Source: Octopus sinensis
Taxonomy: Eukaryota
Direction of reading: 5' to 3'
Assembly (NCBI RefSeq): GCF_006345805.1
Contig: NW_021832229.1
Location: 62,001-126,000, forward strand
Length of the DNA stretch: 64,000 nucleotides
Shown here: piece after piece, positions 3,838 through 53,342 of the stretch
Numbering within the stretch: the first letter of the stretch is position 1
How the letters are laid out: each line of letters opens with the position of its first letter
Position numbers and translations under genes: made by a program
Notes under the pieces: generated by a model
Database searches by the model: none
Told to the model about the DNA's origin: nothing
Seen by the model: only the letters and a program-made list of their open reading frames with translations

Positions 3838-4467
3838 AACACCATATCCGAGCGTGGCCGTCTGCCAGCCTCGTCTGGCACCTGTGTCGGTGGCACATAA
3901 AAAACACCATCTGAGCGTGGCCGTCTGCCAGCCTCGTCTGGCACCTGTGTCGGTGGCACATAAAAAACACCATCCGAGCATGGCCGTCTGCCAGCCTCGT
4001 CTGGCACCTGTGTCGGTGGCACATAAAAAACACCATCTGAGCGTGGCCGTCTGCCAGCCTCGTCTGGCACCTGTGTCGGTGGCACATAAAAAACACCATC
4101 CGAGCGTGGCCGTCTGCCAGCCTCGTCTGGCACCTGTGTCGGTGGCACATAAAAAACACCATCTGAGCGTGGCCGTCTGCCAGCCTCGTCTGGCACCTGT
4201 GTCGGTGGCACATAAAAAACACCATCCGAGCGTGGCCGTCTGCCAGCCTCGTCTGGCACCTGTGTCGGTGGCACATAAAAAACACCATCTGAGCGTGACC
4301 GTCTGCCAGCCTCGTCTGGCACCTGTGTCGGTGGCACATAAAAAACACCATCCGAGCGTGGCCGTCTGCCAGCCTCGTCTGGCACCTGTGTCGGTGGCAC
4401 ATAAAAAACACCATCCGAGCGTGGCCGTCTGCCAGCCTCGTCTGGCACCTGTGTCGGTGGCACATAA
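3838..4467 (+). repeat. Ten-copy 63-bp tandem array in the RTE 3' UTR
   Basis: Unit caccatc(c/t)gagcgtggccgtctgccagcctcgtctggcacctgtgtcggtggcacataaaaaa. It produces the 21-aa repeats in the ORF track. Confidence 0.97.
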
Positions 4468-4659
4468 AATCACCCACTACACTCTCGGAGTGGTTGGCGT
4501 TAGGAAGGGCATCCAGCTGTAGAAACACTGCCAGATCTGACTGGCCTGGTGTAGCCTTCGGGCTTGCCAGACCCCAGTTGAACCGTCCAACCCATGCTAG
4601 CATGGAAAGCGGACGTTAAACGATGATGATGATGATGATGATATGCATATATTTGTCTG

Positions 4660-13827: not shown

Positions 13828-13947
13828 CATACATGTATATATTTATGTATATATGTATGTATGCATATATATATATATATATATATACATGTATATATAT
13901 ATTTGTATGTATGAGTATAAGAGTATGTATGAGTATGTATGAGGAGA

Positions 13948-14710
13948 AATTTTTTTTCAAGAATATTGTTTACTTTAATATTTGTGTCTTTGTGAAATAG
14001 ATTTTGGCTGGATTATGTTCTTCATTATCTTTGTATTAATGGCGGTGGAGAAGGATGGCATTCCAGTGTCTTGTTTATTTTAACTCATAAAATTATGTGT
14101 AATTAAAATTACTTCATCAGTAAATGAAGAATTTAAAAATATTCTTCCTTCCCCCCATCCCCATCCACTCTAATACTTCAATATAAATATGTTTAATAGG
14201 TAATTCCAGCCTGAAGAATTTAATGTTATATAATAATGATAAGTCATTAAAGGCATCATTATGAAAACATATTCAAAATTTTGTTATTAATAACCAAATA
14301 GTAGAAACCGATTGACAAGATGAGACATTTCAAATAGATTTTTTATAATGAACTGCTGTCAAATGTAAATAAAGGAAATGTAAACACAGGAGATAATGGC
14401 TGCGAACGATCTGCAATTAGCAACGTGGGTGATGGTTTAATTAGCAACATTCACTGGTAAAGAAAAAAAGGGATTACCTCCCCTTGCCTTTCAACTCCAT
14501 CCAAGCATGTTCCATGCATTAAATACCTGCCAGTTGTTACTTGGGGATTCGACAGGATTGTTAGCGCATTGCTTAGAATGTATTGAAGTAGTAATTCTGG
14601 CATTCTGTGCTCTGAGTTCAAATCCCATCAACGTCAACTTTGCTTTTTCATTCTTTCAATACAACATCAGGTACTGAAAGGAATACATCATTATATTTTG
14701 CACTCTCTCA

Positions 14711-16324: not shown

Positions 16325-17700
16325 TCTGCCGGTATTGATACATCAATTAGAAAGCATTTTTTTTCTTCATGATCTCTGACAACTATATCTGGTCTGTTGG
16401 CCTTAATTTCTCTATCTGTGTGTATCGGCATATCCCAGAGTATGGTTGCTTTCTCGTTTTCTGTGACCTTTTCTGGTGTGTGCCTATACCATCTTTTTTC
16501 TGTTGTTATTCCATAATGTTGGCATAGCTTCCAATGTATGTAGGTTCCAACTCTGTCATGTCTGTGAATATATTCCTTCTTAGCCAGGACTGGGCAGCTA
16601 GAGATAATATGATTTATTGTTTCTTGTCCATCTCCACATATTCTGCAGTTACTTGTAATATTTCTTTTCATTACATGTTTTTGGTAATTTCTGGTGGGGA
16701 GGCTTTGGTCTTGTGCTGCAATTAAAAATCCCTCTGTTTCTGCTTTGAGTCCTGAGCTTCTCAACCATTGCTGGGATTTTTCTTTGTCTATTTCTTTTGC
16801 GTTTAGTTTAGTGCAGTATTTACCATGAAGGGGCTTTTCTTGCCATCGTTTTATCATGGCTCATTGCTGTTCTATTTTTAGTTTGGATTTCATTTGTTTT
16901 ATAGCTTTTGTTGTTTCTTCATCATCTTCTTCTTCTTCTTTGTGTTTATTAGGTGGTATGATTTCTTGTTTGTATTTGTCAGCTTCCTTAAATACTGAGA
17001 ATAGTTTTTTGTTTTGCTCGTGTTTTTCCGCTATCTGGATCAGTTTTCCTTCCTTCTGAAGTAGGTATTTTTGCAGTCCTATGGTGGTTATTTTATAGTA
17101 GTTTTCCAGCTGTATAAGGCCTCTACCACCTTCTATACGTTGTATATATAGTCTTTCTATGTCAGATTTTGGGTGATGCATCCTAGATCCTGTCAGTATT
17201 TTTCTTGTTTTCCTATCTATTTTGGACAGTTCATTTCGTGTCCAGTTAAGGATATTGTAGCTGTAACTTATAACTGGGACAGCTAAAGTGTTGATACCTA
17301 TTATCTTGTTTTTAGCTTTGAGTTCTGTTTTTCGTATCGATCTAACTCGTCTATAATATTCTTTTTTTATTTTCTCTTTCATTTGTGTGTGTTGTGTCTT
17401 ATCTAGTTCATAGATTCCTAAGTATTTGTAAGTTTGGCTTTGGTCTAATTCTTTTATTTCATTGGTTTTATCTAGTGTGATGTTGTTACTCTTAACTAGT
17501 TTTCCTCTTTTCATGGTTACTTTGGCGCATTTTTCTAATCCAAATTTCATATCTATTTCTTTGGTAAATCCATGAACTGTCTTTAATAGTGTTTCCAGCT
17601 GTTTGTCATTTGCAGCGTATAGTTTTAGGTCATCCATATATAAAAGGTGGCTGATCGTTTTGGCGTAACATTTATATCCGCATCCAGTTCTATTTAGCAT
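16325..17700 (-). mobile_element. R4/Dong family A fragment (partial RT, CCHC, REL endonuclease)
   Basis: HLLYMDDLKLY, CRICG...ETINHIISSC and KANRPDIVV...IDVSIP in ORFs 16861..17700 and 16273..16857. Confidence 0.9.
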
Positions 17701-17704
17701 ATCA

Positions 17705-17743
<39 letters not shown>

Positions 17744-17757
17744 TATTATTATTATTA

Positions 17758-17844
<87 letters not shown>

Positions 17845-17849
17845 TTTTT

Positions 17850-20712
17850 TTTTTCTTCTTTCAAATTTTCTTCCATTTCTTGCCGAGTGTCTTCCCGACT
17901 CCTAGGGCAAAGAAACTCATAGTGTATATTGGTAGGCCATTAAACCAAACTCAGTAGTTCGTTCATTTTTTTTTTTTTTTTTTTTTAAAGTTAAATTAAA
18001 ATACATGAGCAGCAACAGTTCTCACATCGACAATGCTCTTCTCAATACATGTGATGTACCAGTTAAGACAATCTTTTGCACTTCTTGCAGGGATGGTAAG
18101 CCAGGGATCATTCTCATATAATTTTCGGTTCCCTTCTTGATCATTCCTAGTGCTCCTACGATCACTGGTATTGTAACCGCCTTGAGATGCCACATTTTCT
18201 CAATTTCAATGAGTAGGTCTTTATATTTTCTGAGCTTGTCAAACTCTTTCACTGAGATATTATGATCACAGGGGATGCTCATGTCGATCAATAAGCAAAC
18301 TTTATTGTTTTGGTCTTTCACAACAATATCTGGTTTATTGGCCTTGATGGTTCGGTCTGTATGTACTGGAAAGTCCCAGAGAATGGTTACGTTTTCTCCT
18401 TCAGTTACAGCCTCAGGGTGGTGATTATACCACTTGTCGGCAGTTTTGATATTGTAATGCCGACTTATTAGCCAGTGGAGATATTGGCCAACTCTGTCAT
18501 GTCTTAATTTATACTCCACTGGTGCTAAGACTTTACATCCAGAGATTAGGTGGTCCACTGTTTCAATCATGTCGTTGCAGAATCTGCTTTTAGCCCTGAG
18601 CTCCGCAGCCACTGATGGGTTTGCTTCTGGTCAACATCAGCTTGTTTGCTGCGGGTTACATATTTGCCGTGCAGAGGTTTCTCCTCCCACCTATCAGCCA
18701 ATTGCTCGTGCGCTTTTTTCATTGCCATCATTTTCACCTTCTTTGCAACAATAGTTGCCGTACTTCCCTCGGGTTGTTCACTTTGGGTATCCTGCACGAG
18801 ATCAATAGCAAATTTTTTGCTTTCCTTGATGATAGAATGAAGCTTCTTTCGTCTCTCGTGATTTTCCACGAGCTTTAGCATCCAGTCATTCGATATTTCG
18901 AGATATTTGGCCAGTCCAATTGTGGTTGTTTTGTAAGCTAGTTCAAATTGGATCAGGCCTCGACCTCCTTGGGCTCTGGGAAGGTAAAGGCGATCTACGT
19001 CTGCCTTTGGGTGGTGCATCCTATTACAACTCAGCAGCTTGCGTATTTTTCTATCTATATTCTTTACTTCACTCATATTCCAGTTCAACACATTGTAGCT
19101 ATAAGTAACAACTGGAACTGCTAAGGAATTTATAGCTAACACCTTGTTACGTGCATTTAGTTCAGATTTCAGGACTGCACGAACTCTCCTATAACATTCC
19201 TTCCTGATTTTCTCTTTCATGCTTGCATGCTGAATACCAGAGCCATCATTTATCCCTAAATATTTGTATGTCTGTTCTTGCTCAAGCTCTCTTATGACTG
19301 TGTCAACATCTAACACGACTGAATTTGTGGTCTTCACTTTCCCTTTCTGGAAAGTGGCCTTGGCACACTTCTCAAGTCCAAACTCCATCCCGATGTCATC
19401 GCTGAATGCTTTCACGGTGCGCAATAGGCCTTCAAGTTCATTATTGTCTTTACCATAAAGTTTTAAGTCATCCATATAAAATAGATGGCTTATTTTTTTA
19501 TTGGCAATTTTATACCCATACCCTGTTCTGTTTAATTCACTTGTAAGGGGTTTTAGGGCCATGCAGAATATTAAAGATGAAAGTGAGTCACCTTGAAAAA
19601 TTCCACAGTTGATGTTTATATTTTCTGAGGCAAGTACTCCATTAGAGTGGTATAATTGGAGATTCGTATTCCACAACGACATATTGTGCTTCAGGAAGTT
19701 TGAAATCACAGGGAAAATTTTAAAGATGTCCAGCGATCTCAAGATCCATGGATGCGGTATACTGTCGAAGGCCTTTTTATAGTCAATCCATGCGGTGCTG
19801 AGATTTCTGCGCTTGTTGTGACAGTTCTCAAGGATCATACGATTGATTAGCAGTTGATCTTTGCATCCGTAAGAGCCTCGGCGGCACCCTTTTTGTTCAA
19901 TGGGGAAAATATCGTTCTTCTCCATGAATGCATATGTTTTCTCCGCCAGGATAGATGTTAGGATTTTATACGTGGTGGATAGACAGGTTATAGGCCGATA
20001 GTTTTTTGGAAGGTTGGTTTCGTTATTCTTTGGGAGTAGGTAAGTAATGCCACTTGCTAACCATTCAGGTGTTTTCTTTGGGTCTCTCAAAATTCCATTG
20101 AGCAGCTGAACTAGGTTACCGTGTGCGCACGGGAGCGATGCGAGCCAGAAATTCGGCACCCTATCTTTACCGGGGGATTTCCAATTATGGGCCTTCGTGA
20201 GTGCCTGTCTTAGGTCTGCTATTGTGATGTCTTCCCATGCTTGTTGTAAATTTTGGTAGGATCCTTCAGTTTGTATAATCCAGTCTGCATTTATGTTGTA
20301 CGTCTTCTTGTCACTCCAAATCCTTTTCCAAAAGTTTTGAACTTCTTCCATGGTTACTTTAACGGTTACTTTCTCCTTCCCTATTTCTCTGTAGAATTTT
20401 TTGGCATTGGATGTGAACAGCTTATTTTGCTTGTAAAACTTGTTTCTCTTCTCAAATCTTCGTATTCTTTGGGCTTTTGCTTGGACTTTTTGTTTCAGCG
20501 TTTCTTTTATTGATATCAGTTCTTCTCTTGGTGAGGATCCAAATTTTCTCTTCATCTTTCTTCCTGTTCTGGATCTTACATCATTTCCACATATTAGTTC
20601 ATTTAATATTGATATTTCCCCTCTCATAAATTCAATATCTTTTCAATTTTACTTCTCCAGGTTTGATTTCTTCCCAGGTTTTGTTTTCTTTGTTTTTTCG
20701 GGGGCATACATA
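17850..20712 (-). mobile_element. R4/Dong family B, 5'-truncated, with intact RT
   Basis: ORFs 18567..20627 and 18022..18612. A-rich 3' UTR abuts (ATT)n. Confidence 0.93.
18022..20627 (-). pseudogene. Dong B polyprotein (RT plus REL endonuclease) broken by a ~98-bp deletion near 18594
   Basis: NYRPITCLST, WIDYKKAFDS, GIFQGDSLS, YMDDLK and KPDIVVKD...IDMSIP. Deleted relative to the sister copy at 26575-26672. Confidence 0.9.
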
Positions 20713-20723
20713 TTATATTATTA

Positions 20724-20768
<45 letters not shown>

Positions 20769-20831
20769 TATTATTATTATTAATATTACTATTTTTTTTA
20801 TTATTATTTATTATTATTATTACTATTATTT

Positions 20832-20862
<31 letters not shown>

Positions 20863-21003
20863 TATTATTATTATTTTTTTTATTATTATATTATTACTAC
20901 ATTATTTTATTATTATTATTATTATTATTATTATATTATTATTATGATTATTATTATATTATTATTATTATTATTATATTACTATTTTTTGTTGTTGTTG
21001 TTG

Positions 21004-21038
<35 letters not shown>

Positions 21039-21096
21039 TATTATTATATTATTATTATTATCATTATTATTATTTATTATTATCATTTTATTATTA

Positions 21097-21161
<65 letters not shown>

Positions 21162-21258
21162 CACTATTATTATTATATATTATTATATATTATTATTATT
21201 ATATATTATTATTATTATATTATTATTATTATTATTCTATTATTATTATTATTATTAC

Positions 21259-21291
<33 letters not shown>

Positions 21292-21372
21292 TATTATTAT
21301 ATATTATTATTATTATATATTATTATTATTATTATTATTTATTATTATTATTATTATTATATTATTGTATTA

Positions 21373-21408
<36 letters not shown>

Positions 21409-21431
21409 TATTATTATTTATTATTATTATT

Positions 21432-21700
21432 CAGTAGTTTTATTTTTATAGCTGCTTTCACTTCACTATCGAGCGCAGCTCTGTGTGCCTTGGGTATGTG
21501 CTGTGATTGTTGTGATGCTCTGATGGTTATTGTATGGAAAGTGTTCTGCGTAGGATGTGTTGCAGTGCCTAGTAGTGCAATTTTTGTATGTATATGTGTT
21601 TGTTCCTGTGATTTGTATATTTGTTATATTTATTATTATTAATATTATTATTATTATTATTATTATCATGTATTATTATTATTATTATTATTACTATATA

Positions 21701-21734
<34 letters not shown>

Positions 21735-21787
21735 TATTATTATTATTATATTTTTTTATTATTATTCATTATATTATTATTATATTA

Positions 21788-21822
<35 letters not shown>

Positions 21823-22188
21823 TTTATTATTATATATCATTTATTATTATTATTATATACGATTATATTATTTTATTATTATTATCATATTAGTATTATT
21901 ATTATTCTTACTATTATATTATTATTATCTATTATTATATTATTATTATTTTTATTATATTATCATGCATTATTATTTTAGATTACTATTAGATATTATT
22001 ATTATATCATTATTAGCAGTAGTTTTATTGTTATAGCATGCTTTCATTTCACTACCGAGCACAGCTCTATGTGCTTGGGTATGTGCTGTGATTGTTGTGA
22101 TGCTTGATGGTTATTGTATGGAAAGTGTTCTGCGTAGGATGTGTGCAGTGCCTAGTAGGGCAATTTCTGTATGTTATTGTGTTTGTAT
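21432..22188 (-). mobile_element. Two more Dong family A 3' stubs (21432-21630, 22017-22188)
   Basis: Same sequence as the stubs at 15860 and 16135, with scattered indels. Confidence 0.8.
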
Positions 22189-22370
22189 ATTATTATTATA
22201 TTATATATTACAGTTGTTGTTATTATTATTATTATAATTATGATTATTATATTACTATATATATTATTTTATTCTATTATTATTATTATTATTTTTATAT
22301 TATTATACTATTATTCTTGTTGGTGTTTTATTTTATATATATTATTATTATTATCATTATATTTTATTTT

Positions 22371-22848
22371 GGGGCAGTGAGCTGGCAGAATTGTTAGCAT
22401 GCTTGGATTGCTTAGCAGTATTTCCGTTTGCTAATTCTGAGTTCAGTTTGCTGAGGTTTTTGCCTTCATACTTTGGGGTCAATATACAGAGTATCATGGA
22501 AAACTGGGGTGATATAATCAACAAACACCCTCCCCCCAAATTTCAGGCATTGGCTTATATAGAAACGATAATCCTTTCACTGCACTATGAGCACAACTCT
22601 TTCTGGTGGTGCTATTTTCTGCATATCATATATATTGCAATTCTGCGCCTTTTGTATTATTGTCTGAATTATTTTTGGGTTTTTTATCATACCTAATGTG
22701 CCTACAATAATAGGAACTGCTTTTATTTTTTAGGCTCCAAATTTCAGTTACTTCTATTTTGATCTTTGTACTTTCAGTTTCGCCATTCTTTTAGAAAACA
22801 TGGTATTACTTGGTGATCTGTATAACTATATTACTATATCTGGCCTAT
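22371..22848. repeat. Indel-rich duplicate of 25157-25675 (SINE plus Dong A fragment)
   Basis: Collinear. Differences are mostly 1-4-nt deletions in this copy. Confidence 0.85.
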
Positions 22849-23222
22849 ATTATGATTATTATTATTATTATTATTATCATTATATTATTATCATTATTAT
22901 TAAATTATTATTATTATTATTATTATTATTATCATCTTATTATTATATTTTATTATTATTATTATTATATCCTATTATTATTATTATTATTATATTATTA
23001 TTATCATTATTATTAATATTATTATTATTATTATTATTATCATTCCTTATTATTATTATTATTATTATTTTATTATTATTATATCATCTTCTTATTATTA
23101 TTATTATATTATTATTATTATTATTATTATTATCATCCTTATTATTATTATTATATTATTATTATTATTATTATTATTATATTATTATTATTATTATTAT
23201 TATTTTATTATTATTATCATCC

Positions 23223-23259
<37 letters not shown>

Positions 23260-23302
23260 CATCCTTATTATTATTAAATTATCATTATTATTATATATTA
23301 TT

Positions 23303-24084
23303 CTATGTTTGACTTTTGCTTTATATTTGTACAAGTTGGCTCCAAGTCTCACCCAGAGACCTCAAGAGACAACAGGGTTGGAAGTTCATGTTGTTGTTAT
23401 GCCTAGTGTGCCATATATTTGGGGGGTGGGGATGTTTTGTACTAATGAATGTCTAAAAAAAAAAAGTTTTTTTTTTTTTTAAACCGAAAATTATGTGTTT
23501 TTAAACCTTGAGATTACATAGAGAGTATTTTGCGTAGGATATGAGCAGTTCCCATGAGCACTATCTTTTGAACTTCTGCCATTTTTGGGTTTCCTGGTAT
23601 CTGAGTTAGGTAGCTATCAGCCCCTTTTGCTATCATTCCAGGGCACCTATGACAACAGGTATTGTTTTAGTCTTCAGCATCCACATTTTGCTGATTTCTA
23701 TTTCAAGATCTTTATATTGCTCAGTTTTGGTAGGTCTTGATAGATACGTTTATATCGATTGGACAGTCATATCAATGAGGAGGCATGTTCTTTGTTTGAA
23801 GTTTTCAATATGATGTCTGGCCTATTTGCATCTATCTTCCTGTCAGTTTGAATGGTGAAGTTCCAGAGGAGTGAGATGTGGTCATTTTCAAGCACTGGGG
23901 GTGGTTTGTGTTCCCACCAGTTTTTTTCATGGGGCAAATCCAGGTTTTTACAGATTACCCAGTGAATATATTGTGCAGCTCTATCGTGCCTGTTGAGATA
24001 CTCTGTAGGCGCTAGAAGACTGCACTTGGAGACCACATGGTCAATGGTTTCATTTTGTTGCTTGCATACATGACACGTTGGACT
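23303..24084 (-). mobile_element. 3' fragment of a third R4/Dong family
   Basis: ORF 23767..24036 YLNRHDRAAQYIHW...LWNFTIQTDRKIDANRPDII. The 3' UTR differs from families A and B. Confidence 0.85.
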
Positions 24085-24090
24085 ATTATT

Positions 24091-24130
<40 letters not shown>

Positions 24131-24135
24131 CATCC

Positions 24136-24181
<46 letters not shown>

Positions 24182-24261
24182 CATTATTTTATTATATTAT
24201 TATTATTATTATCATCCTTATTATTATTATTATATTATTATTATTATTATTATTATCATCC

Positions 24262-24338
<77 letters not shown>

Positions 24339-24546
24339 TATTATCATCCTTATTATTATTATTATTATTATTATATTATTATTATTATCGTCCTTATTAT
24401 TATTATTATCATTATTATTAATATTATTATTATTATTATTATTATTATCATCCTTATTATTATTATTATTATATTATATATTATATTATTATTATTATTA
24501 TCATCCTTATTATTATTATTATATTATTATTATTATTATTATTATT

Positions 24547-25098
24547 GAGTGAGAGAGCAGTTCATGCCATCAAAGTGACACTGGGGTAAAATATACGAAG
24601 CCCAATATACCATCATGACTACCCGTCTGATAAAGGTACACCAGGCACATGCATCACAACCATATGTGCGCGACATGGTGATCTCATATCAAGATAAACA
24701 GCACATGACCTTGCAGGTGGGGCCCAGTTAGAATTTTCTTCAGGTTGAGTAGCCCATCCCGCTCAAACGGTCCCTGAATAAGGGTTGTTTAAGGATGTTG
24801 AAAAAACCACCCATGTTTCCAGAGGTGAATTATTCAAACCCCAAAGAATCCCTCTCAACACATGGCTATGATGCTCCCCACTACTTCTGCTCATGATCAG
24901 AGATGCACATATCGTCAGCCACTAAGGGACATGCTCAACTGGTTAAGGTCAAACAACTGACAAGCAAATCTGTGGTATTGAGCAGAATATTTGCTGTAGC
25001 CCATCTTTTATACCAAGACAAAACAATGTACATGATAACACTTCCAATCAGTTAAGATCAGAAGCCATGAGAGCCACTGCCTGGTACTGCATCAGGGC

Positions 25099-25100
<2 letters not shown>
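24547..25100. mobile_element. 554-bp non-coding insertion inside (ATT)n, unclassified
   Basis: High-complexity sequence flanked directly by (ATT)n on both sides. No ORF of 60 aa or more. Confidence 0.55.
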
Positions 25101-25131
<31 letters not shown>

Positions 25132-25156
25132 CATTATTATTATTATTATTATTATT

Positions 25157-25675
25157 GGGGCAGTGAGCTGGCAGAATTGTTAGCATGCTGGATGAAATGC
25201 TTAGCAGTATTTCCCCGTTTGCTACATTCTGAGTTCAGATTCTGCTGAGGTTGACTTTGCCTTACATACTTTTGGGGTCAATATACAGAGTATCATTGAA
25301 ACACTGGGGTTGGTATAATCAACAAACACCCTCCCCCCAAATTTCAGGCCTTGTGCTTATAATAGAAACGATTATTATTCCTTTCACTGCACTACTGAGC
25401 ACAACTCTGTGTGCCTGGTGGTGCTATTTTCTGCATATCATATATACTTGCAAGTCCTGGCGCTTTTGTTATGTGTTTGTCTGAATTATTTTTGGGTTTT
25501 TTATCATACCTAATGTGCCTACAATAATAGGAACTGCTTTTATTTTTTAGGCTCCAAATTTCAGTTACTTCTATTTTCAGATCTTTGTACTTTCAGTTTC
25601 GCCATTTCTTTTAGAGAAACATGGTCATTTTCACTTGGTGATCTTGTATAACTATATTACTATATCTGGCCTATT
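25157..25675. mobile_element. SINE (+, 25157-25370) followed by decayed Dong A 3' fragment (-, 25380-25675)
   Basis: SINE head ggcagtgagctggcagaattgttagc. Minus strand gives NRPDIV...KYKDLKIEV...VPIIVGTLGMIK-like remnants. Confidence 0.75.
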
Positions 25676-25807
25676 ATTATGATTATTATTATTATTATTA
25701 TTATCATTATTATTATTATCATTATTATTAATATTATTATTATTATTATTATTATTATCATTATTATTATTATTATCATCATCATCATTATTATTATTAT
25801 ATCATCA

Positions 25808-25853
<46 letters not shown>

Positions 25854-25854
25854 C

Positions 25855-27270
25855 TTTTTTTTCTTCTTTCAAATTTGCTTCCATTTCTTGCCAAGTGTCT
25901 TCCCGACTCCTAGGGCAGAGGAACTCATAGTATACATTGGTAGGCCATTAAACTAAACTCACTAGTTCGTTCATTTTTTTAAAGTTAAATTAAAATACAT
26001 GGGTAGTAATAGTTCTCACATCGACAATGCTCTTCTCAATACGTGTGATGTACCAGTTAAGACAATCTTTTGCACTTCTTGCAGGGATGGTAAGCCAGGG
26101 ATCATTCTCATATAATTTTCGGTTCCCTTCTTGATCATTCCTAGTGCTCCTGCAATCACCGGTATTCTAACCGCCTTGAGATGCCACATTTTCTCAATTT
26201 CAATGAGCAGGTCTTTATATTTTCTGAGCTTGTCAAACTCTTTCGCCGAGATATTATGATCACAGGGGATGCTCATGTCGATCAATAAGCAAACTTATTT
26301 TGGTCTTTCACAACAATATCTGGTTTATTGGCTTTGATGGTTCGGTCTGTATGTACTGGAAAGACCCACAGAATGGTTACATTTTCTCCTTCAGTTACAG
26401 CTTCAGGGTGGTGATTATACCACTTGTCGGCAGTTTTGATATTGTAATGCCAACTTATTAGCCAGTGTAGATATTGGCCAACTCTGTCATGTCTTAATTT
26501 ATACTCCACTGGTGCTAAGACTTTACATCCAGAGATTAGGTGGTCCACTGTTTCAATCATGTCGTTGCAGAATCGGCATTTTGGGTCTGCTCCATTTTTT
26601 CATCACATTGGCCCGGTAGTTCCGGGTTAATAGGCTTTGATCTTGAGCAGCCAGGATGAAACCTTCGCTCTCTGCTTTTAGCCCTGAGCTCCATAGCCAC
26701 TGATGGGTTTTCTTCTGGTCAACATCAGCTTGTTTGCTGTGGGCCATATATTTGTCGTGCAGAGGTTTCTCCTCCCACCTATCAGCCAACTGCTCGTGCG
26801 CTTTTTTCGTTGCCATTATTTTCACCTTCTTTGCAACAATAGTTGCCATACTTCCCTCGGGTTGTTTAGTTTGGGTATCCTGCATGAGATCAATAGCAAA
26901 TTTTTTGCTTTCCTTTAGTCTAGGTAGGTACAGATGATCAGCATCTGCTTTTGGGTGGTGCCATGTCCTTAGATGTTAGTAGTTTTCTTGTCTTCCTGTT
27001 CATACATTGGAATTCTGTAAAATTCCAGTTAATGATGCTAAGTCTATATTTGACTACTAGAAGTGCCAGTGTGTTAATGGCTTCATTGCAATTTTTGGAG
27101 TTGAGTTCAGTTTTTAGTATGAGTCTTATTCTACTGTAATATTCCTTTCTTATTTTTTCCTTCATAGTAGCATATTGTATAACATCTCCTTCGTTTATCC
27201 CCAGCTATTTATAGCTTTCTTGTTATTCAAGCTCCTTGATGGTAGTGTCACGCCTCATCTAAATGTTTGC
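25855..27270 (-). mobile_element. Dong family B 3' copy (25855-26912) joined to an older diverged Dong fragment (26913-27270)
   Basis: ORFs 26016..26285, 26282..26560 and 26553..26885 are near-identical to B. 26938..27165 is only distantly similar. Confidence 0.85.
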
Positions 27271-28527: not shown

Positions 28528-28689
28528 ATTAAACAATGAAAAGATTCAATGTTTTTTTTTTAATTTTCGGTTTTTGGCGCGTAATTCTTTGCTCCTCTTC
28601 TCTCTTTTGTGAATGCGAGATGTCCATGATTTGTGCAAGATTTGGCTGCTATTTCGGTTAATATCTAGATCCGCACCCGGTGGAAAAAA

Positions 28690-29220
28690 TGGAAACGCAA
28701 ATGTGTAACAGTTGTAAGGCATCGTATATTGACGTAATAAGACGGAAAAAAGGGGCGCTGACGAACGGGGGTGGGGGAGGGGGGGTGTCGGAAGGGGGGG
28801 GTGGAAAATTCCCAGGATCAACCTGGAATCTAAAATGTGTAACAGTTGTAAGGCATCGTATATTGACGGAATAAGACGTAAAAAAAGGGGCGCTGACGAA
28901 CGGGGGTGGGGGGGGGTCGGAAAATTCCCAGGATCAACCGTAGAGGATCCACGCCCAGGTGGCAAAAATGGAAAAAATATGTGTAAGAGGTGTAAGGCAT
29001 CGTATATTGAAGGAATATGACGAAAAAAAAAGCGCGCTGACAAACGGGGGTGGGGGGGAGGGCGCTCGGAAAATTCCCAGGATCAACCGTAGAGGATCCA
29101 CGCCCAAGTGGCAAAAATGGAAAAAAAATGTGTAAGAGGTGTAAGGCATCGTATATTGAAGGAATATGACGAAAAAAAAGCGCGCTGACAAACGGGGGGG
29201 GGGGGGGGCGCTCGGAAAAT
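28690..29220 (+). repeat. Merlin subterminal tandem repeats (4 units left; 3 units right at 31745-32130)
   Basis: aaggcatcgtatattga recurs at ~28717, 28851, 28995 and 29145. Its reverse complement occurs at ~31801, 31951 and 32089. Confidence 0.9.
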
Positions 29221-29303
29221 TGCCTACGATTTAAAGAAAAATTTACCATCAATTTTCACCATTTAAACGCATTGTTGACATAAGGGAAGTAACTCTCTAA
29301 AAA

Positions 29304-29601
29304 TCTCTATATATAAACGGCAGTTTTTCTGTGTGTCTGTCAGGTTGTACCCTCACCCTGACCACGGCTTTCAACCGATTCTGATGAAACTTGACACACA
29401 CATAGCCCAATGTCATAATTCAAAACTAACGCAGCGAAAATTTTGAAAAGTTCCCCCAGTTCTGAAAAAAATCGATAAATTCGACATGGGGTCGAGAATT
29501 TCAATTTTTTTGCTATTTTCAATATTTTTCAATATTTTTGCTAAAAATGCTTTATAGTTATTTCCCTTACAAACTCGAGCAACGCCGGGCGATACTGCTA
29601 G
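29304..29601 (+). mobile_element. 298-bp non-autonomous Helitron-like element in the left Merlin arm
   Basis: A|TC start, CTAG|T end, GC-rich subterminal ctcgagcaacgccggg, no TSD. Confidence 0.75.
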
Positions 29602-30163
29602 TCTATATATATATATTTTTTTATTTTACAAACAAAAAGTGAAAACTGAAGTAATGGAATTTGAATTTTTGAAGTTGCGATTGATAATTATTCTGTGACA
29701 ATCAATAATATTGGGAAAATATAATCTGTACTTACCACATGCGTGGTAGATTTGCTGATTATTTTCAACAAATCTACCACGCTTCTATTTCAAATTCTTT
29801 AACGTTGTCAGTTGTTAGAGCAGCCACGTGGAAATTGGTCGAACATCTTTATTGCCCAGGATACAAATTCGCAGCTTGCAATAAAAATTCATGAATCCTT
29901 TTGGGAGCAGGGCGGAAAGCTTGCATGAATTGGTATGTAGCTACATATTGTTTTAAGTTGGGCTGGCACTTCCGGTTGACCACATTGAGTGACCACATTG
30001 CCGGAAGTGCCAGCCCTAATTGCGTGAAGTGCCAGCCCTAATTGCGTGCGCAGGCAGCGTGGAAAAGCCTTTCAAATTTGTGTATTCGCAGTGACTAGAC
30101 GTACTCTTCCCTTTAACGAAAATATTATTTGAATTTATCTTTAATCTGGTCATTTTAATTTGC

Positions 30164-31116
30164 ATGATGGCATCGTGTGTTATTCCGTGCGAGCTGAGTC
30201 TGTATGACGGGGTTTCGAGATTTCGGCATAACGATGAAACAGCATTAGAATTTTTTCGGGAACATGGGGTGATACCAAGAAATGTGAATTGCCCGACGTG
30301 CAATTCACCGTGTATTCTACGAAATGGAACACATATATTTCGTTGCAGGAAAATGGTTCGCAGAAGAAGACAGAAGGCGACAGAATGTGGTTTTTCTGTT
30401 TCCATATTAAGAACACCTTTTTGAATCGGAGTAGATTAACCCCCTGGAAAATTCTTTTGTATGTAAACCATTTCTTAACAGAAGATTGGTCGCACCAAGC
30501 AGTTATTGAGAATTTAGATATATCGCTTGCTACGTCGGTTGATTGGAGGTCCTTCTGCTCTGAAGTCTGTCTTCATTGGGCCGCAAATTCCCAAACACCA
30601 ATTGGAGGGCCAGGAATAGAAGTAGAAATAGATGAGACAGTCTTGGTTAGGAGGAAATATAACAGGGGGAGACTTGTGAAAACTATTTGGCTATTTGGCG
30701 GAATCGAAAGAGATTCCAAGAAAAATTTTTTGATACCCCTGACATCAGAATGTGGTGAAATTCTAAGGCGAGATTCTTCCACACTAATTCCATTAATTAG
30801 ACGCCACATTAAACCTGGTTCAACTGTATATAGTGATTGTTGGCCCGTATATAATAGGTTAGATACATTAGGCTACACGCATTTTAAGATAAATCACAGC
30901 CAGAATTTTGTAGATCCAACAAACCCATCTATACATACACAGACAATAGAAAGATTTTGGGGGAGCTTAAAAAAAAACGTCATAAGAGCAGGAATTAAAT
31001 CGTGTTACTTAAAACAATATGTAGCTACATACCAATTCATGCAAGCTTTCCACCCTGCTCCCAAAAGGATTCATGAATTTTTATTGCAAGCTGCGAATTT
31101 GTATCCTGGGCAATAA
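30164..31116 (+). pseudogene. Merlin transposase with a single frameshift near 30405-30412
   Basis: N-terminal CPTC...CRK...C in 30164..30424. VEIDET, WLFGGIER, YSDCW, INHS and HTQTIERFW in 30289..31116. Confidence 0.92.
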
Positions 31117-31363
31117 AGATGTTCGACCAATTTCCACGAGGCTGCTGTAACAACTGACAACGTTAAAGAATTTGAAATAGAAGCGTGGTAGATTTGTTGA
31201 AAATAATCAGCAAATCTACCACGCATGTGGTAAGTACAGATTATATTTTCCCAATATTATTGATTGTCACAGAATAATTATCAATCGCAACTTCAAAAAT
31301 TCAAATTCCATTACTTCAGTTTTCACTTTTTGTTTGTAAAATAAAAAAATATATATATATAGA

Positions 31364-31661
31364 CTAGCAGTATCGCCCGGCGTTGCTCGAGTTTGTAAGG
31401 GAAATAACTATAAAGCATTTTTAGCAAAAATATTGAAAAATATTGAAAATAGCAAAAAAATTGAAATTCTCGACCCCATGTCGAATTTATCGATTTTTTT
31501 CAGAACTGGGGGAACTTTTCAAAATTTTCGCTGCGTTAGTTTTGAATTATGACATTGGGCTATGTGTGTGTCAAGTTTCATCAGAATCGGTTGAAAGCCG
31601 TGGTCAGGGTGAGGGTACAACCTGACAGACACACAGAAAAACTGCCGTTTATATATAGAGA
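31364..31661 (-). mobile_element. Mirror copy of the Helitron-like element in the right Merlin arm
   Basis: Reverse complement of 29304-29601 at the equivalent position. Confidence 0.75.
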
Positions 31662-32730
31662 TTTTTAGAGAGTTACTTCCCTTATGTCAACAATGCGTTT
31701 AATGGTGAAAATTGATGGTAAATTTTTCTTTAAATCGTAGGCAATTTTCCGAGCGCCCCCCCCCCGTTGTCAGCGCGCTTTTTTTTCGTCATATTCCTTC
31801 AATATACGATGCCTTACACCTCTTACACATATTTTTTTCCATTTTTGCCACCTGGGCGTGGATCCTCTACGGTTGATCCTGGGAATTTTCCGACCCCCCC
31901 CCCCCCCCCCCCCGTTCGTCAGCGCCCTTTTTTTACGTCTTATTCCGTCAATATACGATGCCTTACAACTGTTACACATTTTAGATTCCAGGTTGATCCT
32001 GGGAATTTTCCACACCACCCCCCCCTTCCGACCCCCCCCTCCCCCACCCCCGTTCGTCAGCGCCCCTTTTTTCCGTCTTATTACGTCAATATACGATGCC
32101 TTACAACTGTTACACATTTGCGTTTCCATTTTTTCCACCGGGTGCGGATCTAGATATTAACCGCTATTTCTAGCTACGAAAGAGATATGTTTATGGTTTC
32201 TGCGAGATTTGGCTGCTAAATCTAGCTATGGAAGTGATCGTAGTTGTTCGTGATTTGGCTGCTATTTCTAGCTATGGAAGCTACCTTCTTCCTTCTCCGT
32301 CGTTGCCTCTTTAGGTTGTTGTGTGTTTTAGTTTGAGAAATATTCTCAAATACTTTCCAACCACTGAAATATTTGGAAACCAATTCTTTATTTTAATTTA
32401 TCCATTGTTTCTCTTTATCTCTCTTATCTCTCTCTCTCTCTTCTCCCATTATATATTAACACTTCACCTTTTGTCTCTTTGTCTCTCAACTCATACTTTC
32501 CCTCTCTACTAAAAACGTGTTGTCCTAATTCTCTCTTTCTCCTTCTCTCTGTCCGTCTCTTACTTTTTCTCCTTTTCAATCTCGCCCCCCTCCTCATCTC
32601 TTCTTTTATTCACTTCGCTTATCTTTCTTTCATTCTCTCTAGTTCTTTCAATATTTCTTTCCGTTTTCCTTATTTTCTTCTTTCTGTTTCTCTCTCTCTC
32701 CCTCTTTCTTTCTTTCTTTTTTTCTTGTTG

Positions 32731-33045: not shown

Positions 33046-33059
33046 TTGTTATAATTAGT

Positions 33060-33087
<28 letters not shown>

Positions 33088-33090
<3 letters not shown>

Positions 33091-33930
33091 CACTCCTGCC
33101 ACCCATCCCACACAAAAAGAAACATCCCATATAGTATGGCAAGACGAATATGTAGCATAGTTACTGATTCACAAATACGACTAATAAGACTAGATGAACT
33201 CAAAAACTTCCTCCTAGAGCAAAAATACCCCCTTAAACTAATAGAAAATGGAATCACAAGAGCATTAAAACTAGACATCACACAACTCAGGACACACAAA
33301 ACAAAAAACAAAGAAAACACTATCCCTTTTATAAACACACACAACCCTGGAGTTACCAACATCTTCCAAACCATACATTCAAACCTACCAATAGCCTTAC
33401 AAAGCCCCAAAATGAAGAACATATTAAACAAATATAGCATAAAAAACAGTAGACGACAGGACAAAAACCTAAAGAAACACCTAACAAGAGCGAAATTCTC
33501 TTCAGAAACTAAAACGGAATTCTTTGCAAAAGAGTGCGGAGATGGTAGATGTGGGATCTGCAGCAACCCCACCTATAAATACATAGAGGGAAACAGAGAG
33601 ATGAGATTTAAAAATGGTGACATATTCAAAGTAAATGCAGATATGAACTGCAAGACGCAGAACGTTATATACTGCATAACCTGCCCCACGTGCAAGAATT
33701 ACGTAGGTGAAACTGGTAATTCTTTGTGCCAGCGAGCCAGGATTCACCGACACCATATTCGGCAGGAAGAACTACGCAAAATACCACTAAGTACACACCT
33801 AGTTACATGTGGAGAGGGAAAATTTAAGATCTTTCCCTTCTACAAATGTCCAAAGAACGACACCTCTTTCAGGAGAAATATGGAAAAATATTTCATAGCT
33901 AAGTTCTCCCCCAAATTAAATGGCTGAAAC
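33088..33930 (+). mobile_element. Penelope-like element fragment 1 (RT C-terminus plus GIY-YIG endonuclease)
   Basis: HSCHPSHTKRNIPYSMARRI, CGDGRCGIC and NVIYCITCPTCKNYVGET in ORF 33136..33927. Confidence 0.92.
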
Positions 33931-50220: not shown

Positions 50221-53200
50221 ATAATAATGAAATTATTGTATACAGTGCTCAGGTGCACCACAACTTGTCAGAAAGTGCATATAAAGTACATGCAGCAATG
50301 TAGAAATGTCTGGAAAGTGAACATGCTTGTGTGTGTATAGAGGGGAGAAAATCAAGTGTAGTGTTGGCGAATCTCAGGAAGCATGGAAGTTTTGAAGGAT
50401 GCAGTGCTCCGACAACTAACAACCGATGCCGGCAGTTTGTTCCATGCTTCAGCAACTCTCAGCGTGAAAAAATGTTTCCTGAAGTCATGGGAGCTGTGCT
50501 GTTTTCTTACTTTGTAAATATGTCCACGGGTGTTAGATGGGTGGAGTTTGAAGAGGTGCTCAGAGTTATTGTTTGTGCGATGGTTGATAATTTTATGGGT
50601 GTCTGCCAAGTCAGCTGCCAGACGTCGGAGTTTCAATGTGTCCATGCCCAGGGAAGTAAGGCGTTCAGGATATGGCAAATGCCTGATGGAGGGTATTCTT
50701 TTGGTTTGCACGTCGCTGAACAGCTTCCAGACGATTGATGTCCTGGGCAAGATAGGGGTTCCAGACCGGTGATGCAAATTCCAGGTGAGCTCTTACCATA
50801 GCTATATAAAGCCACAGATAGATAGCCGGAGAGTGGCTCACAAAGGATTTGGTGAGTGATGCCAAGACACCCTCAGCCTTCTTGACAATTTTAGTGATGT
50901 GTTTTGTCCAACGCAAATCACTGTCGACAATAACACCCAGGTCACGTTCACTTGAAGACTTTTTGAGACTAGTGTTGTGGAGGGAGTAGGTGGACGCTGG
51001 GTTTCTCCTCCCAAAATGCATGGTGGTACATTTGTCCACAGCCAGCTTGAGTTGCCAGTCCATGATCCACTGCTGCATTGTGTCCAGGTCTGCTTGCAAT
51101 AGAGATCCATAGTGTACAGGATTTGACCTCTTTATTTCGAGGTACAGCTTGATGTCATCTGCATATTTCAGCACTGTGGCATTCTTTAAGTTGGCATCTA
51201 TGTCATTAACATATGCAACAAATAAAAGGGGGCCAAGAACAGATCCCTGCGGCACACCAGATGTCATCTCATAGGGCGAAGAGTGCTGTCCTAGAACTGT
51301 GACAACCTCTTTTCGGCCGAAAATAAAGGACTTTAACCAGTTATAGAGTTCGTCTCTTACACTCAACGCAGAAAGCTTCACCATAAGTCTTTTGTGTGGC
51401 ACAGAGTTGAAAGCCTTAGCAAAGTCCAGGTAAACAACATCCACCCAGGATCCGCGATCAGTGATTTGGGTAACGTCCTCAAGAAACTCGATGAGTTGAT
51501 TACAGCAGCTGGAGTTTGGAATAAATCCGAATTGTGACGGCTGGATGAGGCTGTGAGACTTCCAGAAGTTCCAGAGGGTTTCTCTGATACAGGATTCCAT
51601 CAGTTTGGCGATGCAGCTAGTAAGACTGACGGGGCGATAGTTGACAGGCGATGTGCGGTCGCCTTTTTTGAACAGAAGGATGACACTGGCAGTTTTCCAC
51701 TGTTCTGGAGTAACACCATTGTCGAGACAGAATTGGAAGAATAGAGAAAGTTGGCTTAGAAGAAAGTACCCACCGCGTTTGAGAAGTAGGTATGTAACAC
51801 CATCGAGACCAGGAGAGGCATAATTGCGTTTATTCTTTAGGTGGCGTTGCAGCATTGCTGGTGTAAATTGCATAGAAGATATAGAGTCCGATGTCAGTGG
51901 TGATGATGATGGAACATTTTGGTCTTCGACAGTAAAGATGCCGACATAGCATCCAGCAATGATTTCTGCACATTCTTCGGGATTGCCAGTAATCTGTCCT
52001 GTGTGGGGATTGCGAAGGGGACCAACAGGAGAGTGGGGTCTCTGCTTTGAGTGCACATACTTCCAGAACCCTTTGCTGTCAGGGTTAGCTGCAATGCGTT
52101 GTTCAAATTCAAGCACTGCCTTTTTTGTCACCTGCTTGAGGTGGTTGGCTGACCTATTGCGTTTTTTCCTGTTGCTCTCTGATTTGTGCAATTTGTATTC
52201 CCGTTCAGCATTACGGCGTTCTTTCCTGGCAAGTCGGACTGCTGCAGTCTCCCAAATTGCACTATTGGGTGGTTTTTTGTGCTTGCGTGGTACTGATGCT
52301 GCACATGCTGCCCATATTGAATTCAGAATGTTCTGGAGTATAGTGTTCACATCGCCAGAGGCATAAAATTCGCGCCAGTTTGGGCGTTGCAGCTCAGTAC
52401 AATAAGAGCTCCAGTTTGCTTTATTCCAGTCAAAGCGGGCAATCTGAAGATGGTTGTGTTTTTTGTTACAACCAATCAGAGACAAGTCGGCCATTATCAT
52501 GGAATGATCAGAGTCACCCAAAGGTTCTTCGGTAGCGACACTAATGATTGTTTCAGGAGAAGCGGTTAGTAGCAGATCCAAAGTGTTGTTACCCCTTGTG
52601 GGGGAGGTAACAACTTGGGACCAATTCGAATTCAGCACTAGTTCAAGAAAATCGTCTGCACTTTGTGACCAACGGAAGGCCTCCCAGTCAATCTCAGAGA
52701 AATTGAAGTCCCCCGCAACATACACATATGTGGCTGTTTTCATGGCAGCCGCCTTGAGGAGATCAAAAAGCTGTGCGTCTTGGCGATAATTTGGAGGACG
52801 GTAAACGGCTCCGAGCAGAAGTGTTGACATGGTCATGTGTACATTGCAGAAAAATACCTCCTGCTGAGATTGGTTCAAATCATCACAGGGGATTGCCGAT
52901 AGACTTGATCGAACATAAATCATCACACCCCCTCCACGGCGATTAATGCGGTCTTTGCGGAACAGGTTGTAGCCGGTTATGCTGAAAACTCCATCACAGA
53001 GTGCAGAGTGTGCCCACGTTTCCGTGACTGTGATGAAATCTGGGTTGATACTTTTGACGTAGGAGACAAAAAGATGCACCTTGTTGCATAAACTACGGGC
53101 ATTCAAGGACAGCAGTTTATATCTGGATTTCAGATGATGATATACAGGGGATGGCTGATTGTTCTTGGTTAGTTTCCCAAGATTTTTGCATTGCCAGTTG

Positions 53201-53342
53201 TTGTTGTGTGTGTAGTCTGCTCAGTCCAACTGGCATCCCTTATCCACGACTCACCAGACTTGACGAATGTCCAGATCTGCCCATCATCGCGGAGGCTAAA
53301 ACTCTCCCGTGGCACAGAGTTGCGATTTAGGGAAGCCACGGA
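50221..53342 (-). mobile_element. CR1-clade LINE nested in RTE copy 4
   Basis: TSD TTCTTATA at 50213-50220 and 53343-53350, short ATA-repeat tail. Confidence 0.93.
50352..53106 (-). pseudogene. CR1 ORF2 (APE endonuclease plus RT) with one frameshift near 50706
   Basis: VTETW, YRPP, AGDFN, SDH, NYRPVSLTS, YLDFAKAF, GVPQGSVLGP and YADD. 813-aa and 141-aa frames. Confidence 0.93.

What the first reader, a model, noticed from the sequence alone, without database searches (positions are those of the whole stretch)
28656..32162. Foldback Merlin: 1.1-1.3-kb inverted arms that include the end of its own transposase
Seen: perfect termini and 8-bp TSD. The arms 28656-29958 and 31017-32162 are nearly identical and leave only 1058 bp unique. 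The last 33 codons plus stop are duplicated antisense upstream of the ORF. The intact TSD suggests this form transposed as a unit, or was converted in place. Known: described Merlin TIRs are tens to a few hundred bp, and kb-scale arms are typical of foldback elements such as Galileo. Inference: one end was replaced by a copy of the other. Transcripts could form a long hairpin covering coding sequence (self-silencing), and the element could promote rearrangements.
Basis: partly seen in the sequence, partly recalled or inferred. Interest (0 to 1): 0.8.

Follow-up and report, generated by a model that had tools for sequence, protein, structure and literature searches.

The report
Long-armed Merlin transposon, arm reaching its gene
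This is a real, young copy of a recently mobile Merlin-type DNA transposon whose inverted ends are over 1 kb long, and in this one copy the left end has also copied the tail of the transposase gene, which has been described in the fly transposon Galileo but, as far as I could find, not in Merlin.

Summary
The element is 28656-32162 and has an 8-bp target duplication, GCTATTTC. The arms are 28656-29958 and 31007-32162 (not 31017). The unique middle is 1048 bp. 35 full codons plus the stop are repeated antisense in the left arm.

It is a Merlin: IS1595-type DDE domain, GG termini, 8-bp duplications. The window copy carries a private 1-nt deletion that breaks the reading frame.

Long arms are a family trait. 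A sister insertion with an intact 317-aa ORF and its own target duplication has arms of about 1.06 kb. Gene-less derivatives have perfect 8-bp duplications.

The overlap with coding sequence is private to this copy. Its left arm runs 241 bp further in, and its junction is unique in the 2.72-Gb assembly.

Five independent elements carry the 5' region. All break within the same 8 nt of a hairpin-forming motif, each with a different left partner and 2-4 nt of microhomology where that partner is an arm. Both arms of an element share lineage-specific substitutions.

Best reading: the arm was extended by a template switch between arms during break or gap repair (inferred). Galileo shows the same recruitment of the ORF end into its repeats. 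This is a new variant of a known kind, of moderate interest.

The parts
28648..28655 (.). left copy of the 8-bp target-site duplication, GCTATTTC
   Evidence: the reconstituted empty site matches neighbouring host repeat units
28656..29958 (+). left arm (1303 nt), starting GGTTAATATCTAGATCC
28656..29225 (+). terminal and subterminal part of the left arm: four tandem units of 134-149 bp (starts 28668, 28802, 28946, 29095), each with a poly-G run
   Evidence: D2, D5; period 149, 2.7 copies, 92% matches
29226..29717 (+). inner arm segment that sister copies also carry in both arms; no substitutions against the right arm, one 1-nt indel
29718..29958 (+). private 241-bp extension of the left arm, an inverted copy of 31007-31247. 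29849-29958 is the antisense copy of the last 107 coding nt plus the stop. 3 substitutions against the right arm.
   Evidence: the junction is unique in the genome
29955..30048 (+). junction and hairpin motif. The AAGT microhomology lies at 29955-29958. The 17-bp-stem hairpin is GGGCTGGCACTTCCGG...CCGGAAGTGCCAGCCC, with its 9-nt segment in the 'flop' orientation. A 22-bp x 2.4 direct repeat lies at 29997-30048.
   Evidence: (DNA fold -24.5 kcal/mol, z -6.5)
30164..31116 (+). transposase gene (Merlin / IS1595-type DDE), broken by a private 1-nt deletion near 30406. Read in two frames: 30164-30421, then on to the stop at 31114-31116. AATAAA overlaps the stop.
31007..32162 (-). right arm (1156 nt). 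It includes the last 35 codons, the stop and the 3' flank of the gene. Three subterminal units start at 31739, 31888 and 32026.
   Evidence: (I1, D3)
32163..32170 (.). right copy of the target-site duplication, GCTATTTC
32171..32290 (+). host 46-52-bp tandem repeat into which the element inserted (a further part-unit lies at 28611-28655)
   Evidence: (D7, D10, D11)

Best explanation
The feature is a young copy of a recently active Merlin family, and the copy is probably non-autonomous. The family's normal architecture is foldback-like. Each end carries ~570 nt of 134-149-bp subterminal tandem repeats plus ~490 nt of further inverted repeat.

In this copy the left arm was lengthened by another 241 bp. 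The added sequence was copied from just inside the right arm: the 3' flank and the last 35 codons. The new strand was joined, through a 4-nt microhomology (AAGT), to a hairpin-forming motif at the start of the 5' leader.

The most likely process is a template switch between the two arms during repair of a break or an excision gap, or at a stalled fork at that hairpin, finished by microhomology-mediated joining.

Shown: the anatomy, the family context, the private junction, the microhomologies and the arm-to-arm sharing of substitutions.

Inferred: the repair mechanism, and that it happened at this locus.

The copy keeps both termini and could be moved in trans by intact sister copies.
For: Merlin identity.
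- PF12762 DDE_Tnp_IS1595.
- D157, D225 and E263 present.
- GG termini.
- 8-bp duplications at five or more independent insertions: GCTATTTC, CTCCCACC, GCATATTC, AATATATC, GTATAAAT.

The family is young and mobile.
- There are 4 substitutions plus one 1-nt indel between the window copy and L002 over ~1.25 kb of aligned leader, gene and 3' flank.
- L002/L003, L007 and L008 have intact ORFs.

Long arms are the family norm.
- The L002/L003 left arm reaches element position 1062.

The extension is private.
- Only the window has two full-length matches to the inner-arm query.
- Its junction occurs once in 2.72 Gb.

Breaks recur at one site.
- The 49-nt motif exists only in WIN, L002, L003, L004 and L005, plus L006 with a 13-nt deletion.
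- Every one has a different left partner within the same 8 nt.
- Where the partner is an arm, the microhomologies are AAGT, GGAA and GT.
- L004, the window copy's closest sister, keeps CCGG upstream of AAGT. So the window junction is derived.

Arms are copied from each other.
- At 29278, 29405, 29575 and 29615 both arms of an element agree with each other but differ between elements.

Precedent.
- The same two modes of repeat extension are described for Galileo. Template switching in gap repair and recombination between the close inverted repeats are among the mechanisms those authors discuss for its structural variation.
Against: - No read data, so I cannot check the left arm or the 1-nt frameshift directly.
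- No copy with an 'ancestral' left side of the motif survives. The direction of change (extension here versus deletions in the sisters) rests on L004's CCGG and on the microhomologies.
- The three arm-to-arm substitutions all lie in the innermost 141 nt, and two of them are on the template (right) arm. A single recent copying event does not predict this. It suggests later homogenisation of the outer ~1160 nt, or an older extension.
- Four half elements lack any left end within 5-12 kb. The model does not account for them.
Confidence: 0.6

Rival explanations
1. The architecture with the 1303-nt left arm is ancestral. The sister copies (left arm to 1062 in L002/L003, to ~696 in L006) arose from it by deletions that start at the arm/spacer boundary.
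For: The L002/L003 and L006 junctions can each be written as a deletion from a window-like parent, with AA or GT microhomology. Long inverted repeats are prone to deletion at the hairpin base (general knowledge).
Against: L004, the window copy's closest sister (it shares the flop orientation and the variants at 29278 and 30228), has CCGG left of AAGT, which a window-like parent lacks. The window junction is a singleton. The copies with intact ORFs lack the extension.
Confidence: 0.12
2. Assembly artefact: the left arm or its extension was produced by a chimeric palindromic read, or by mis-threading through repeated arms, on an unplaced 219-kb contig.
For: The window lies on unplaced contig C8700. 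L004 and L005 show many 1-nt indels, which suggests imperfect polishing. L031 is a palindrome that runs into its flanks, as fold-back chimeric reads would give.
Against: - The flanks are direct, not mirrored, and rebuild a host repeat unit.
- The arms differ by one repeat unit and by substitutions.
- Mis-threading joins sequences inside shared sequence. It does not create a new 4-nt-microhomology junction found nowhere else.
- The sister insertion L002/L003, at another locus, also has kb-scale arms, though L002 and L003 may themselves be one locus assembled twice.
- A different fold-back (L010/L011) is present in two separately assembled contigs.
Confidence: 0.08
3. The coding overlap is functional. 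Read-through transcripts fold into a hairpin covering the last 107 coding nt and the 3' flank, which gives small RNAs that silence the family in trans, in the manner of maize Mu killer (recalled from memory).
For: The geometry allows it. The antisense copy (29849-29958) lies upstream of the sense gene on the same strand. In the sister copies the arms stop 132 nt downstream of the stop codon, beyond the AATAAA that overlaps it. Only the window copy would therefore give double-stranded RNA that matches the mRNA body.
Against: There are no expression or small-RNA data. It is a single copy with no sign of selection. A by-product of repair explains the structure.
Confidence: 0.05

Closest known systems
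Galileo (P superfamily, Drosophila), a foldback-like transposon
   Same: - kb-scale, internally repetitive terminal inverted repeats.
- Tandem repeat units of ~140 bp in the repeats.
- Repeat extension by tandem-repeat copy number and by recruitment of the adjacent internal sequence.
- The end of the transposase ORF is repeated in reverse at the 5' repeat: 69 bp in the near-complete D. willistoni copy and >500 bp in copy 147.
- Many one-ended and gene-less derivatives.
(PMC4168063, PMC3573991)
   Different: - The transposase here is an IS1595/Merlin-type DDE of 317 aa, not a ~900-aa P-type enzyme.
- Target duplication is 8 bp, not 7.
- The host is not an insect.
- Here the junctions of independent copies all fall in one 8-nt window of a hairpin motif. 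The Galileo passages I read do not mention this.
Canonical Merlin elements (Feschotte 2004, as summarised in PMC8101967)
   Same: DDE_Tnp_IS1595 domain, 5'-GG termini, 8-bp target duplication, and a single intron-less ORF of about 300 aa without the IS1595 N-terminal zinc-finger Pfam domain.
   Different: The published inverted repeats are 24-462 bp. Here they are 1.06 kb (sister copy) to 1.16/1.30 kb (window), with subterminal tandem repeats. A 57%-identical Merlin in Octopus vulgaris has arms of only ~80-100 nt.
Drosophila FB (foldback) elements and Tetris
   Same: Long arms built of tandem repeats. Arm-only palindromic derivatives. Arm sequence amplified as tandem arrays elsewhere in the genome (PMC4079207 listed).
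   Different: Here the autonomous partner and its superfamily are evident and are linked to the arms in the same element.
Abortive gap repair / template-switch derivatives of cut-and-paste elements (Ds, P; recalled from memory, and cited in PMC4168063 as a source of defective copies)
   Same: Internal breakpoints with short microhomologies. Copies rebuilt from the sister template after excision.
   Different: Those are mostly deletions with filler DNA. Here the outcome is an inward extension of an inverted repeat, and one breakpoint is fixed.

Membership tests
Merlin superfamily (eukaryotic IS1016/IS1595-like DNA transposons) | Transposase with a DDE_Tnp_IS1595 catalytic domain | tested here: met
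   PF12762 E = 3e-15 (window piece) and 5e-15 (intact sister protein P0001). 201 homologues, nearly all carrying PF12762.
Merlin superfamily (eukaryotic IS1016/IS1595-like DNA transposons) | Conserved D, D, E catalytic residues | tested here: met
   D157 (EIDET), D225 (YSDCW) and E263 (TIERFW) in P0001. D157 is invariant in the alignment. The other two are held by most homologues. All three codons lie downstream of the window copy's frameshift and are intact.
Merlin superfamily (eukaryotic IS1016/IS1595-like DNA transposons) | 8- or 9-bp target-site duplication | tested here: met
   GCTATTTC (window), CTCCCACC (L002/L003), GCATATTC (L036), AATATATC (L037), GTATAAAT (L038), CTACCCT[C/T] (L034).
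Merlin superfamily (eukaryotic IS1016/IS1595-like DNA transposons) | Terminal inverted repeats that begin 5'-GG | tested here: met
   GGTTAATATCTAGATCC at both ends.
Merlin superfamily (eukaryotic IS1016/IS1595-like DNA transposons) | Inverted-repeat length within the described range (24-462 bp). This is a description, not a definition. | tested here: not met
   1303/1156 nt in the window and ~1062 nt in L002/L003. Range taken from PMC8101967.
Galileo / P superfamily | P-type (THAP plus RNase-H-like) transposase and 7-bp target duplication | tested here: not met
   The only Pfam hit is the IS1595 DDE domain. The duplication is 8 bp.
Foldback-like architecture (a structural class, not a lineage) | kb-scale arms with internal tandem repeats, plus arm-only derivatives | tested here: met
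   gene-less derivatives L034-L038.
Foldback-like architecture (a structural class, not a lineage) | Recruitment of internal or coding sequence into the arms | tested here: met
   29718-29958 mirrors 31007-31247, including 107 coding nt plus the stop. This is private to the window copy.

The most novel reading that the evidence does not exclude
The hairpin motif at the start of the 5' leader is a programmed break or stall site, not an accident. Its 9-nt segment is flipped between copies. On this reading the family propagates or repairs itself from the right end only, and the left arm is regenerated each time by folding back and copying the right arm to a variable depth. That would explain three things at once:
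- the three independent arm junctions in the same 8 nt;
- the arms that match within, but not between, elements;
- the four half elements that keep an exact right terminus but have no left end for 5-12 kb.
This would be a new, partly replicative route by which a DDE transposon makes foldback arms.
Probability: 0.06. Interest if true: 0.8.

Novelty: new variant of a known kind. Interest (0 to 1): 0.4.

Why it matters
Long, internally repetitive inverted ends have arisen in several transposon superfamilies. How they grow is known mainly from Galileo in flies.

This family shows the same two growth modes, tandem-repeat copy number and recruitment of neighbouring internal sequence including the end of the gene. 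It does so in an unrelated superfamily (Merlin) and in a very different animal genome. That supports the view that the behaviour follows from closely spaced long inverted repeats, not from a particular transposase.

The family is young. It has intact genes, many derivatives with perfect target duplications, and several independent junctions at one hairpin. It could therefore serve as a natural system for testing how repair builds foldback arms. It could also show whether a copy whose arms reach into coding sequence triggers RNA-based silencing.

For annotation, such copies may be missed or mis-split if a pipeline assumes short Merlin repeats (my expectation, not tested).

Tried and rejected
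1. I looked for an allelic empty or filled site with 2.3 kb of each flank. The flanks are other high-copy repeats, and nothing spans the insertion site.

2. I looked for an ancestral left side of the motif.
- Only six places carry the 5' region.
- Extending L004 by 12 kb, L005 by 6.5 kb and L008 by 5 kb upstream found no left arm or terminus.
- There is no copy of the right-flank 8-mer near their left junctions. They are therefore not simple abortive-repair products that retain the left target copy.

3. I tested whether the motif is a cryptic transposon end. GGTTGACC only weakly resembles the terminus GGTTAATA (9 of 25 by eye), and the junctions lie 17-25 nt upstream of it. Rejected.

4. Pfam on the ORFs left of the L005 and L007 junctions gave nothing useful. 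Calling them Penelope-like rests on recalled Cys-rich/GIY-YIG motifs only. The L004 neighbour is a confirmed reverse-transcriptase element.

5. Protein search for the same family in other species: the best hit is 66% identical, on short contigs. No cross-species comparison of arms was possible.

Sampling of copies is therefore limited.

7. Literature searches found no Merlin with kb-scale arms. Repbase and Dfam could not be searched.
Full report
**What is in the window**

The element runs from 28656 (GGTTAATATCTAGATCC...) to 32162 (...GGATCTAGATATTAACC). It is flanked by GCTATTTC on both sides.

It sits inside a 46-52-bp host tandem repeat. Removing the element and one GCTATTTC gives GATTTGGCTGCTATTTCTAGCTACGAAAG. 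This matches the next units of the host repeat, so the window carries its own empty-site control.

The inverted arms are 28656-29958 and 31007-32162.
- The outer ~570 nt consists of tandem units of 134-149 bp, each with a poly-G run. There are four units on the left and three on the right.
- The next 492 nt show no substitutions between the arms, and one 1-nt indel.
- The innermost 241 nt differ at three positions.

The unique middle is 29959-31006, 1048 bp.

The gene runs from 30164 to the stop at 31114-31116. 107 coding nt (35 full codons) plus the stop lie inside the right arm, and they are mirrored antisense at 29849-29958.

**What kind of element it is**

The gene product matches PF12762, DDE_Tnp_IS1595. 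In the intact sister protein the D157, D225 and E263 residues align with those of homologues.

With GG termini and 8-bp duplications, this meets the published description of Merlin (PMC8101967) in everything except the length of the inverted repeats.

The nearest named homologues are from molluscs and crustaceans, at 38-58% identity. Nothing above 66% identity is on record.

The genome is 2.72 Gb in 13,516 contigs, with about 30 chromosome-scale pieces. I guess it is a cephalopod, but I did not test this.

The window copy lacks one T near 30406 that all five other copies have. This splits the ORF, so the copy is non-autonomous unless that is an assembly error.

**Family context**

The unique middle finds about eight close copies.

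L002 and L003 lie on C27, 100 kb apart. They share flanks and the target duplication CTCCCACC, so they are one insertion that was later duplicated. They carry an intact 317-aa ORF.
- Their right arm matches the window's left arm over all 1303 nt.
- Their left arm stops at element position 1062, which corresponds to window 29717.
- It therefore does not reach the gene.

Kb-scale arms are thus the family's normal state in a copy that transposed.

Gene-less derivatives with left arms of ~140-170 nt (L037, L038) or 628 nt (L034, L036) have perfect or near-perfect 8-bp duplications at different sites. The arm query had 1943 first-look candidates.

The window copy and L002 differ by 4 substitutions plus one 1-nt indel over ~1.25 kb of aligned leader, gene and 3' flank. 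The family is therefore young and recently mobile.

A different Merlin, 57% identical, from Octopus vulgaris has arms of only ~80-100 nt.

**What is private to the window copy**

Only the window has two full-length matches to the inner-arm query. The 36-nt junction GCTACATATTGTTTTAAGT|TGGGCTGGCACTTCCGG occurs once in the assembly, even allowing three mismatches.

The overlap with coding sequence is therefore a singleton. Nothing shows that this form has transposed.

**The junction motif**

Left of the 5' leader lies the motif CCGGAAGT-[9 nt]-ACTTCCGG TTGACCACATTGAGTGACCACATTG CCGGAAGTGCCAGCCC. It is followed by a 22-bp direct repeat.

The 9-nt segment is inverted between copies.
- 'Flop' (window and L004) gives a 17-bp-stem DNA hairpin of -24.5 kcal/mol, z = -6.5.
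- 'Flip' (L002, L003, L005, L006) gives -14.2 kcal/mol, z = -1.

The 49-nt core occurs only in WIN, L002, L003, L004 and L005, and in L006 with a 13-nt deletion. Every independent element has a different sequence to the left, and the change always falls within the 8 nt CCGGAAGT.

| Element | Sequence to the left of the motif | Microhomology |
|---|---|---|
| WIN | arm to element position 1303 | AAGT |
| L002/L003 | arm to 1062 | GGAA |
| L006 | arm to ~696 | GT |
| L004 | reverse-transcriptase element ending AATAAA + (ATCT)n | - |
| L005 | 3'-truncated Cys-rich ORF + (TA)n | - |

Table sources.

L004 shares the flop orientation and two variants with the window copy. It retains CCGG, which the window junction lacks. 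The window junction is therefore derived.

**The arms are copies of each other**

At 29278, 29405, 29575 and 29615 both arms of the window copy carry one state, and both arms of L002/L003 carry the other.

In the extension, the left arm carries the family consensus at 29826 and 29913. The right arm has private changes there (31139 and 31052; the change at 31052 turns Arg into His). The left arm has one private change, at 29818.

All three differences lie in the innermost 141 nt. One recent copying event does not predict that. It suggests that the outer ~1160 nt were homogenised later.

**Most likely mechanism (inferred)**

1. A break or stall occurs at the hairpin.
2. A strand primed in the left arm pairs with the identical right arm. 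It copies inward past the end of the old repeat, into the 3' flank and the end of the gene.
3. The product is joined to the other end at the motif by microhomology.

This matches the second mode of repeat extension described for Galileo, recruitment of the region immediately after the repeat. It also matches processes those authors discuss for Galileo's structural variation: template switching in gap repair, and recombination drawn to two close inverted repeats of 600 bp or more (PMC4168063, PMC3573991).

In Galileo of D. willistoni the last 69 bp of the ORF are repeated in reverse in the 5' repeat, and in one copy more than 500 bp. The authors called this unique to Galileo. The window shows the same thing in a Merlin.

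**Rivals**

- An ancestral form with a 1303-nt left arm, followed by deletions in the sisters, is possible. L004's CCGG and the singleton junction argue against it.
- An assembly artefact is unlikely.
  - The flanks are direct and rebuild a host repeat unit.
  - The arms differ by a repeat unit and by substitutions.
  - Mis-threading cannot create a new microhomology junction.
  - No reads were available, however, and the contig is unplaced.
- A silencing function for the coding overlap is geometrically possible but untested. Only in this copy would arm-derived double-stranded RNA match the mRNA upstream of the AATAAA at the stop.

**Left unexplained**

Four half elements (L004, L005, L007, L008) keep an exact right terminus. 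They have no left end within 5-12 kb and no left target copy.

Other family members carry different inverted duplications: L009, L010/L011 and L015.

**Verdict**

The feature is real. It is a new variant of a known kind: a foldback-like Merlin with Galileo-style recruitment of its ORF end into the arm. Interest is moderate (0.4). The recurrent hairpin junction is the most intriguing part.

Noticed in passing
L031 = G000:C5:39166000-39167700: An arm-only copy of the family forms a palindrome that continues into the flanking DNA. The flanks are reverse complements of each other at ~96% over at least 450 nt. It is therefore an inverted duplication of the locus, or an assembly fold-back, and not a transposed foldback element.
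   Followed up: partly
G000:C27:12042739-12043569, and identical stretches on C13497, C10297 and C10168 at 13840-14669: A 73-79-nt piece of the inner arm (window ~29640-29718) is amplified as a tandem array of ten or more units. This looks like an arm-derived satellite, as reported for Tetris and FB elements. The three unplaced contigs carry the same array at the same coordinates.
   Followed up: no
G000:C29:13019000-13054000 (L012-L014, L016, L017, L020, L022-L024, L026, L027, L029): A ~35-kb cluster holds many ~80%-identical fragments of the transposase gene in the same orientation. The fragments repeat head to tail, so an older relative of the family has been amplified as a tandem array.
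   Followed up: no
L002 and L003 = G000:C27:12765179-12769218 and 12665015-12669054: The same insertion, with the same flanks and target duplication CTCCCACC, is present twice 100 kb apart. The two differ by a few indels. This is either a recent segmental duplication or a duplicated assembly of one locus.
   Followed up: partly
L006 = G000:C4:124104132-124108107: The right terminus of another family member abuts position 63 of this copy's left arm, so this is a nested insertion of the family into itself. The copy also lacks element positions ~2320-2997.
   Followed up: partly
L009 (C5:134818093-134821848); L010/L011 (C11458 and C28:2964879-2968593); L015 (C7:30024818-30028535): Older relatives (77-89% identical) carry other inverted duplications. 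L009 has a 314-nt inverted repeat around a 655-nt gene fragment. L010/L011 have a spacer-less fold-back at the truncated 5' end, present in two contigs. L015 has an 820-nt palindrome after the gene.
   Followed up: partly
L004, L005, L007, L008 with their extensions L032, L033, L040-L042: Four copies have an exact right terminus but no left arm for 5-12 kb. In L004 a reverse-transcriptase element with an AATAAA + (ATCT)n tail abuts the hairpin motif directly.
   Followed up: partly
window 3624-4615: A GC-rich tandem repeat is open in several frames on both strands (period about 42 codons by eye). It lies next to reverse-transcriptase-like ORFs at 1491-3502.
   Followed up: no
window 16861-20642, 50665-54480, 33055-33927, 55899-56567: The window is dense in retroelement ORFs. 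Reverse-transcriptase-like ORFs run up to 851 aa. Two Cys-rich/GIY-YIG-like ORFs resemble those next to L005 and L007. Pfam did not recognise the one at 33055-33924.
   Followed up: partly
window 20001-26000: A very AT-rich stretch (GC 0.20-0.28) with long runs of simple sequence.
   Followed up: no
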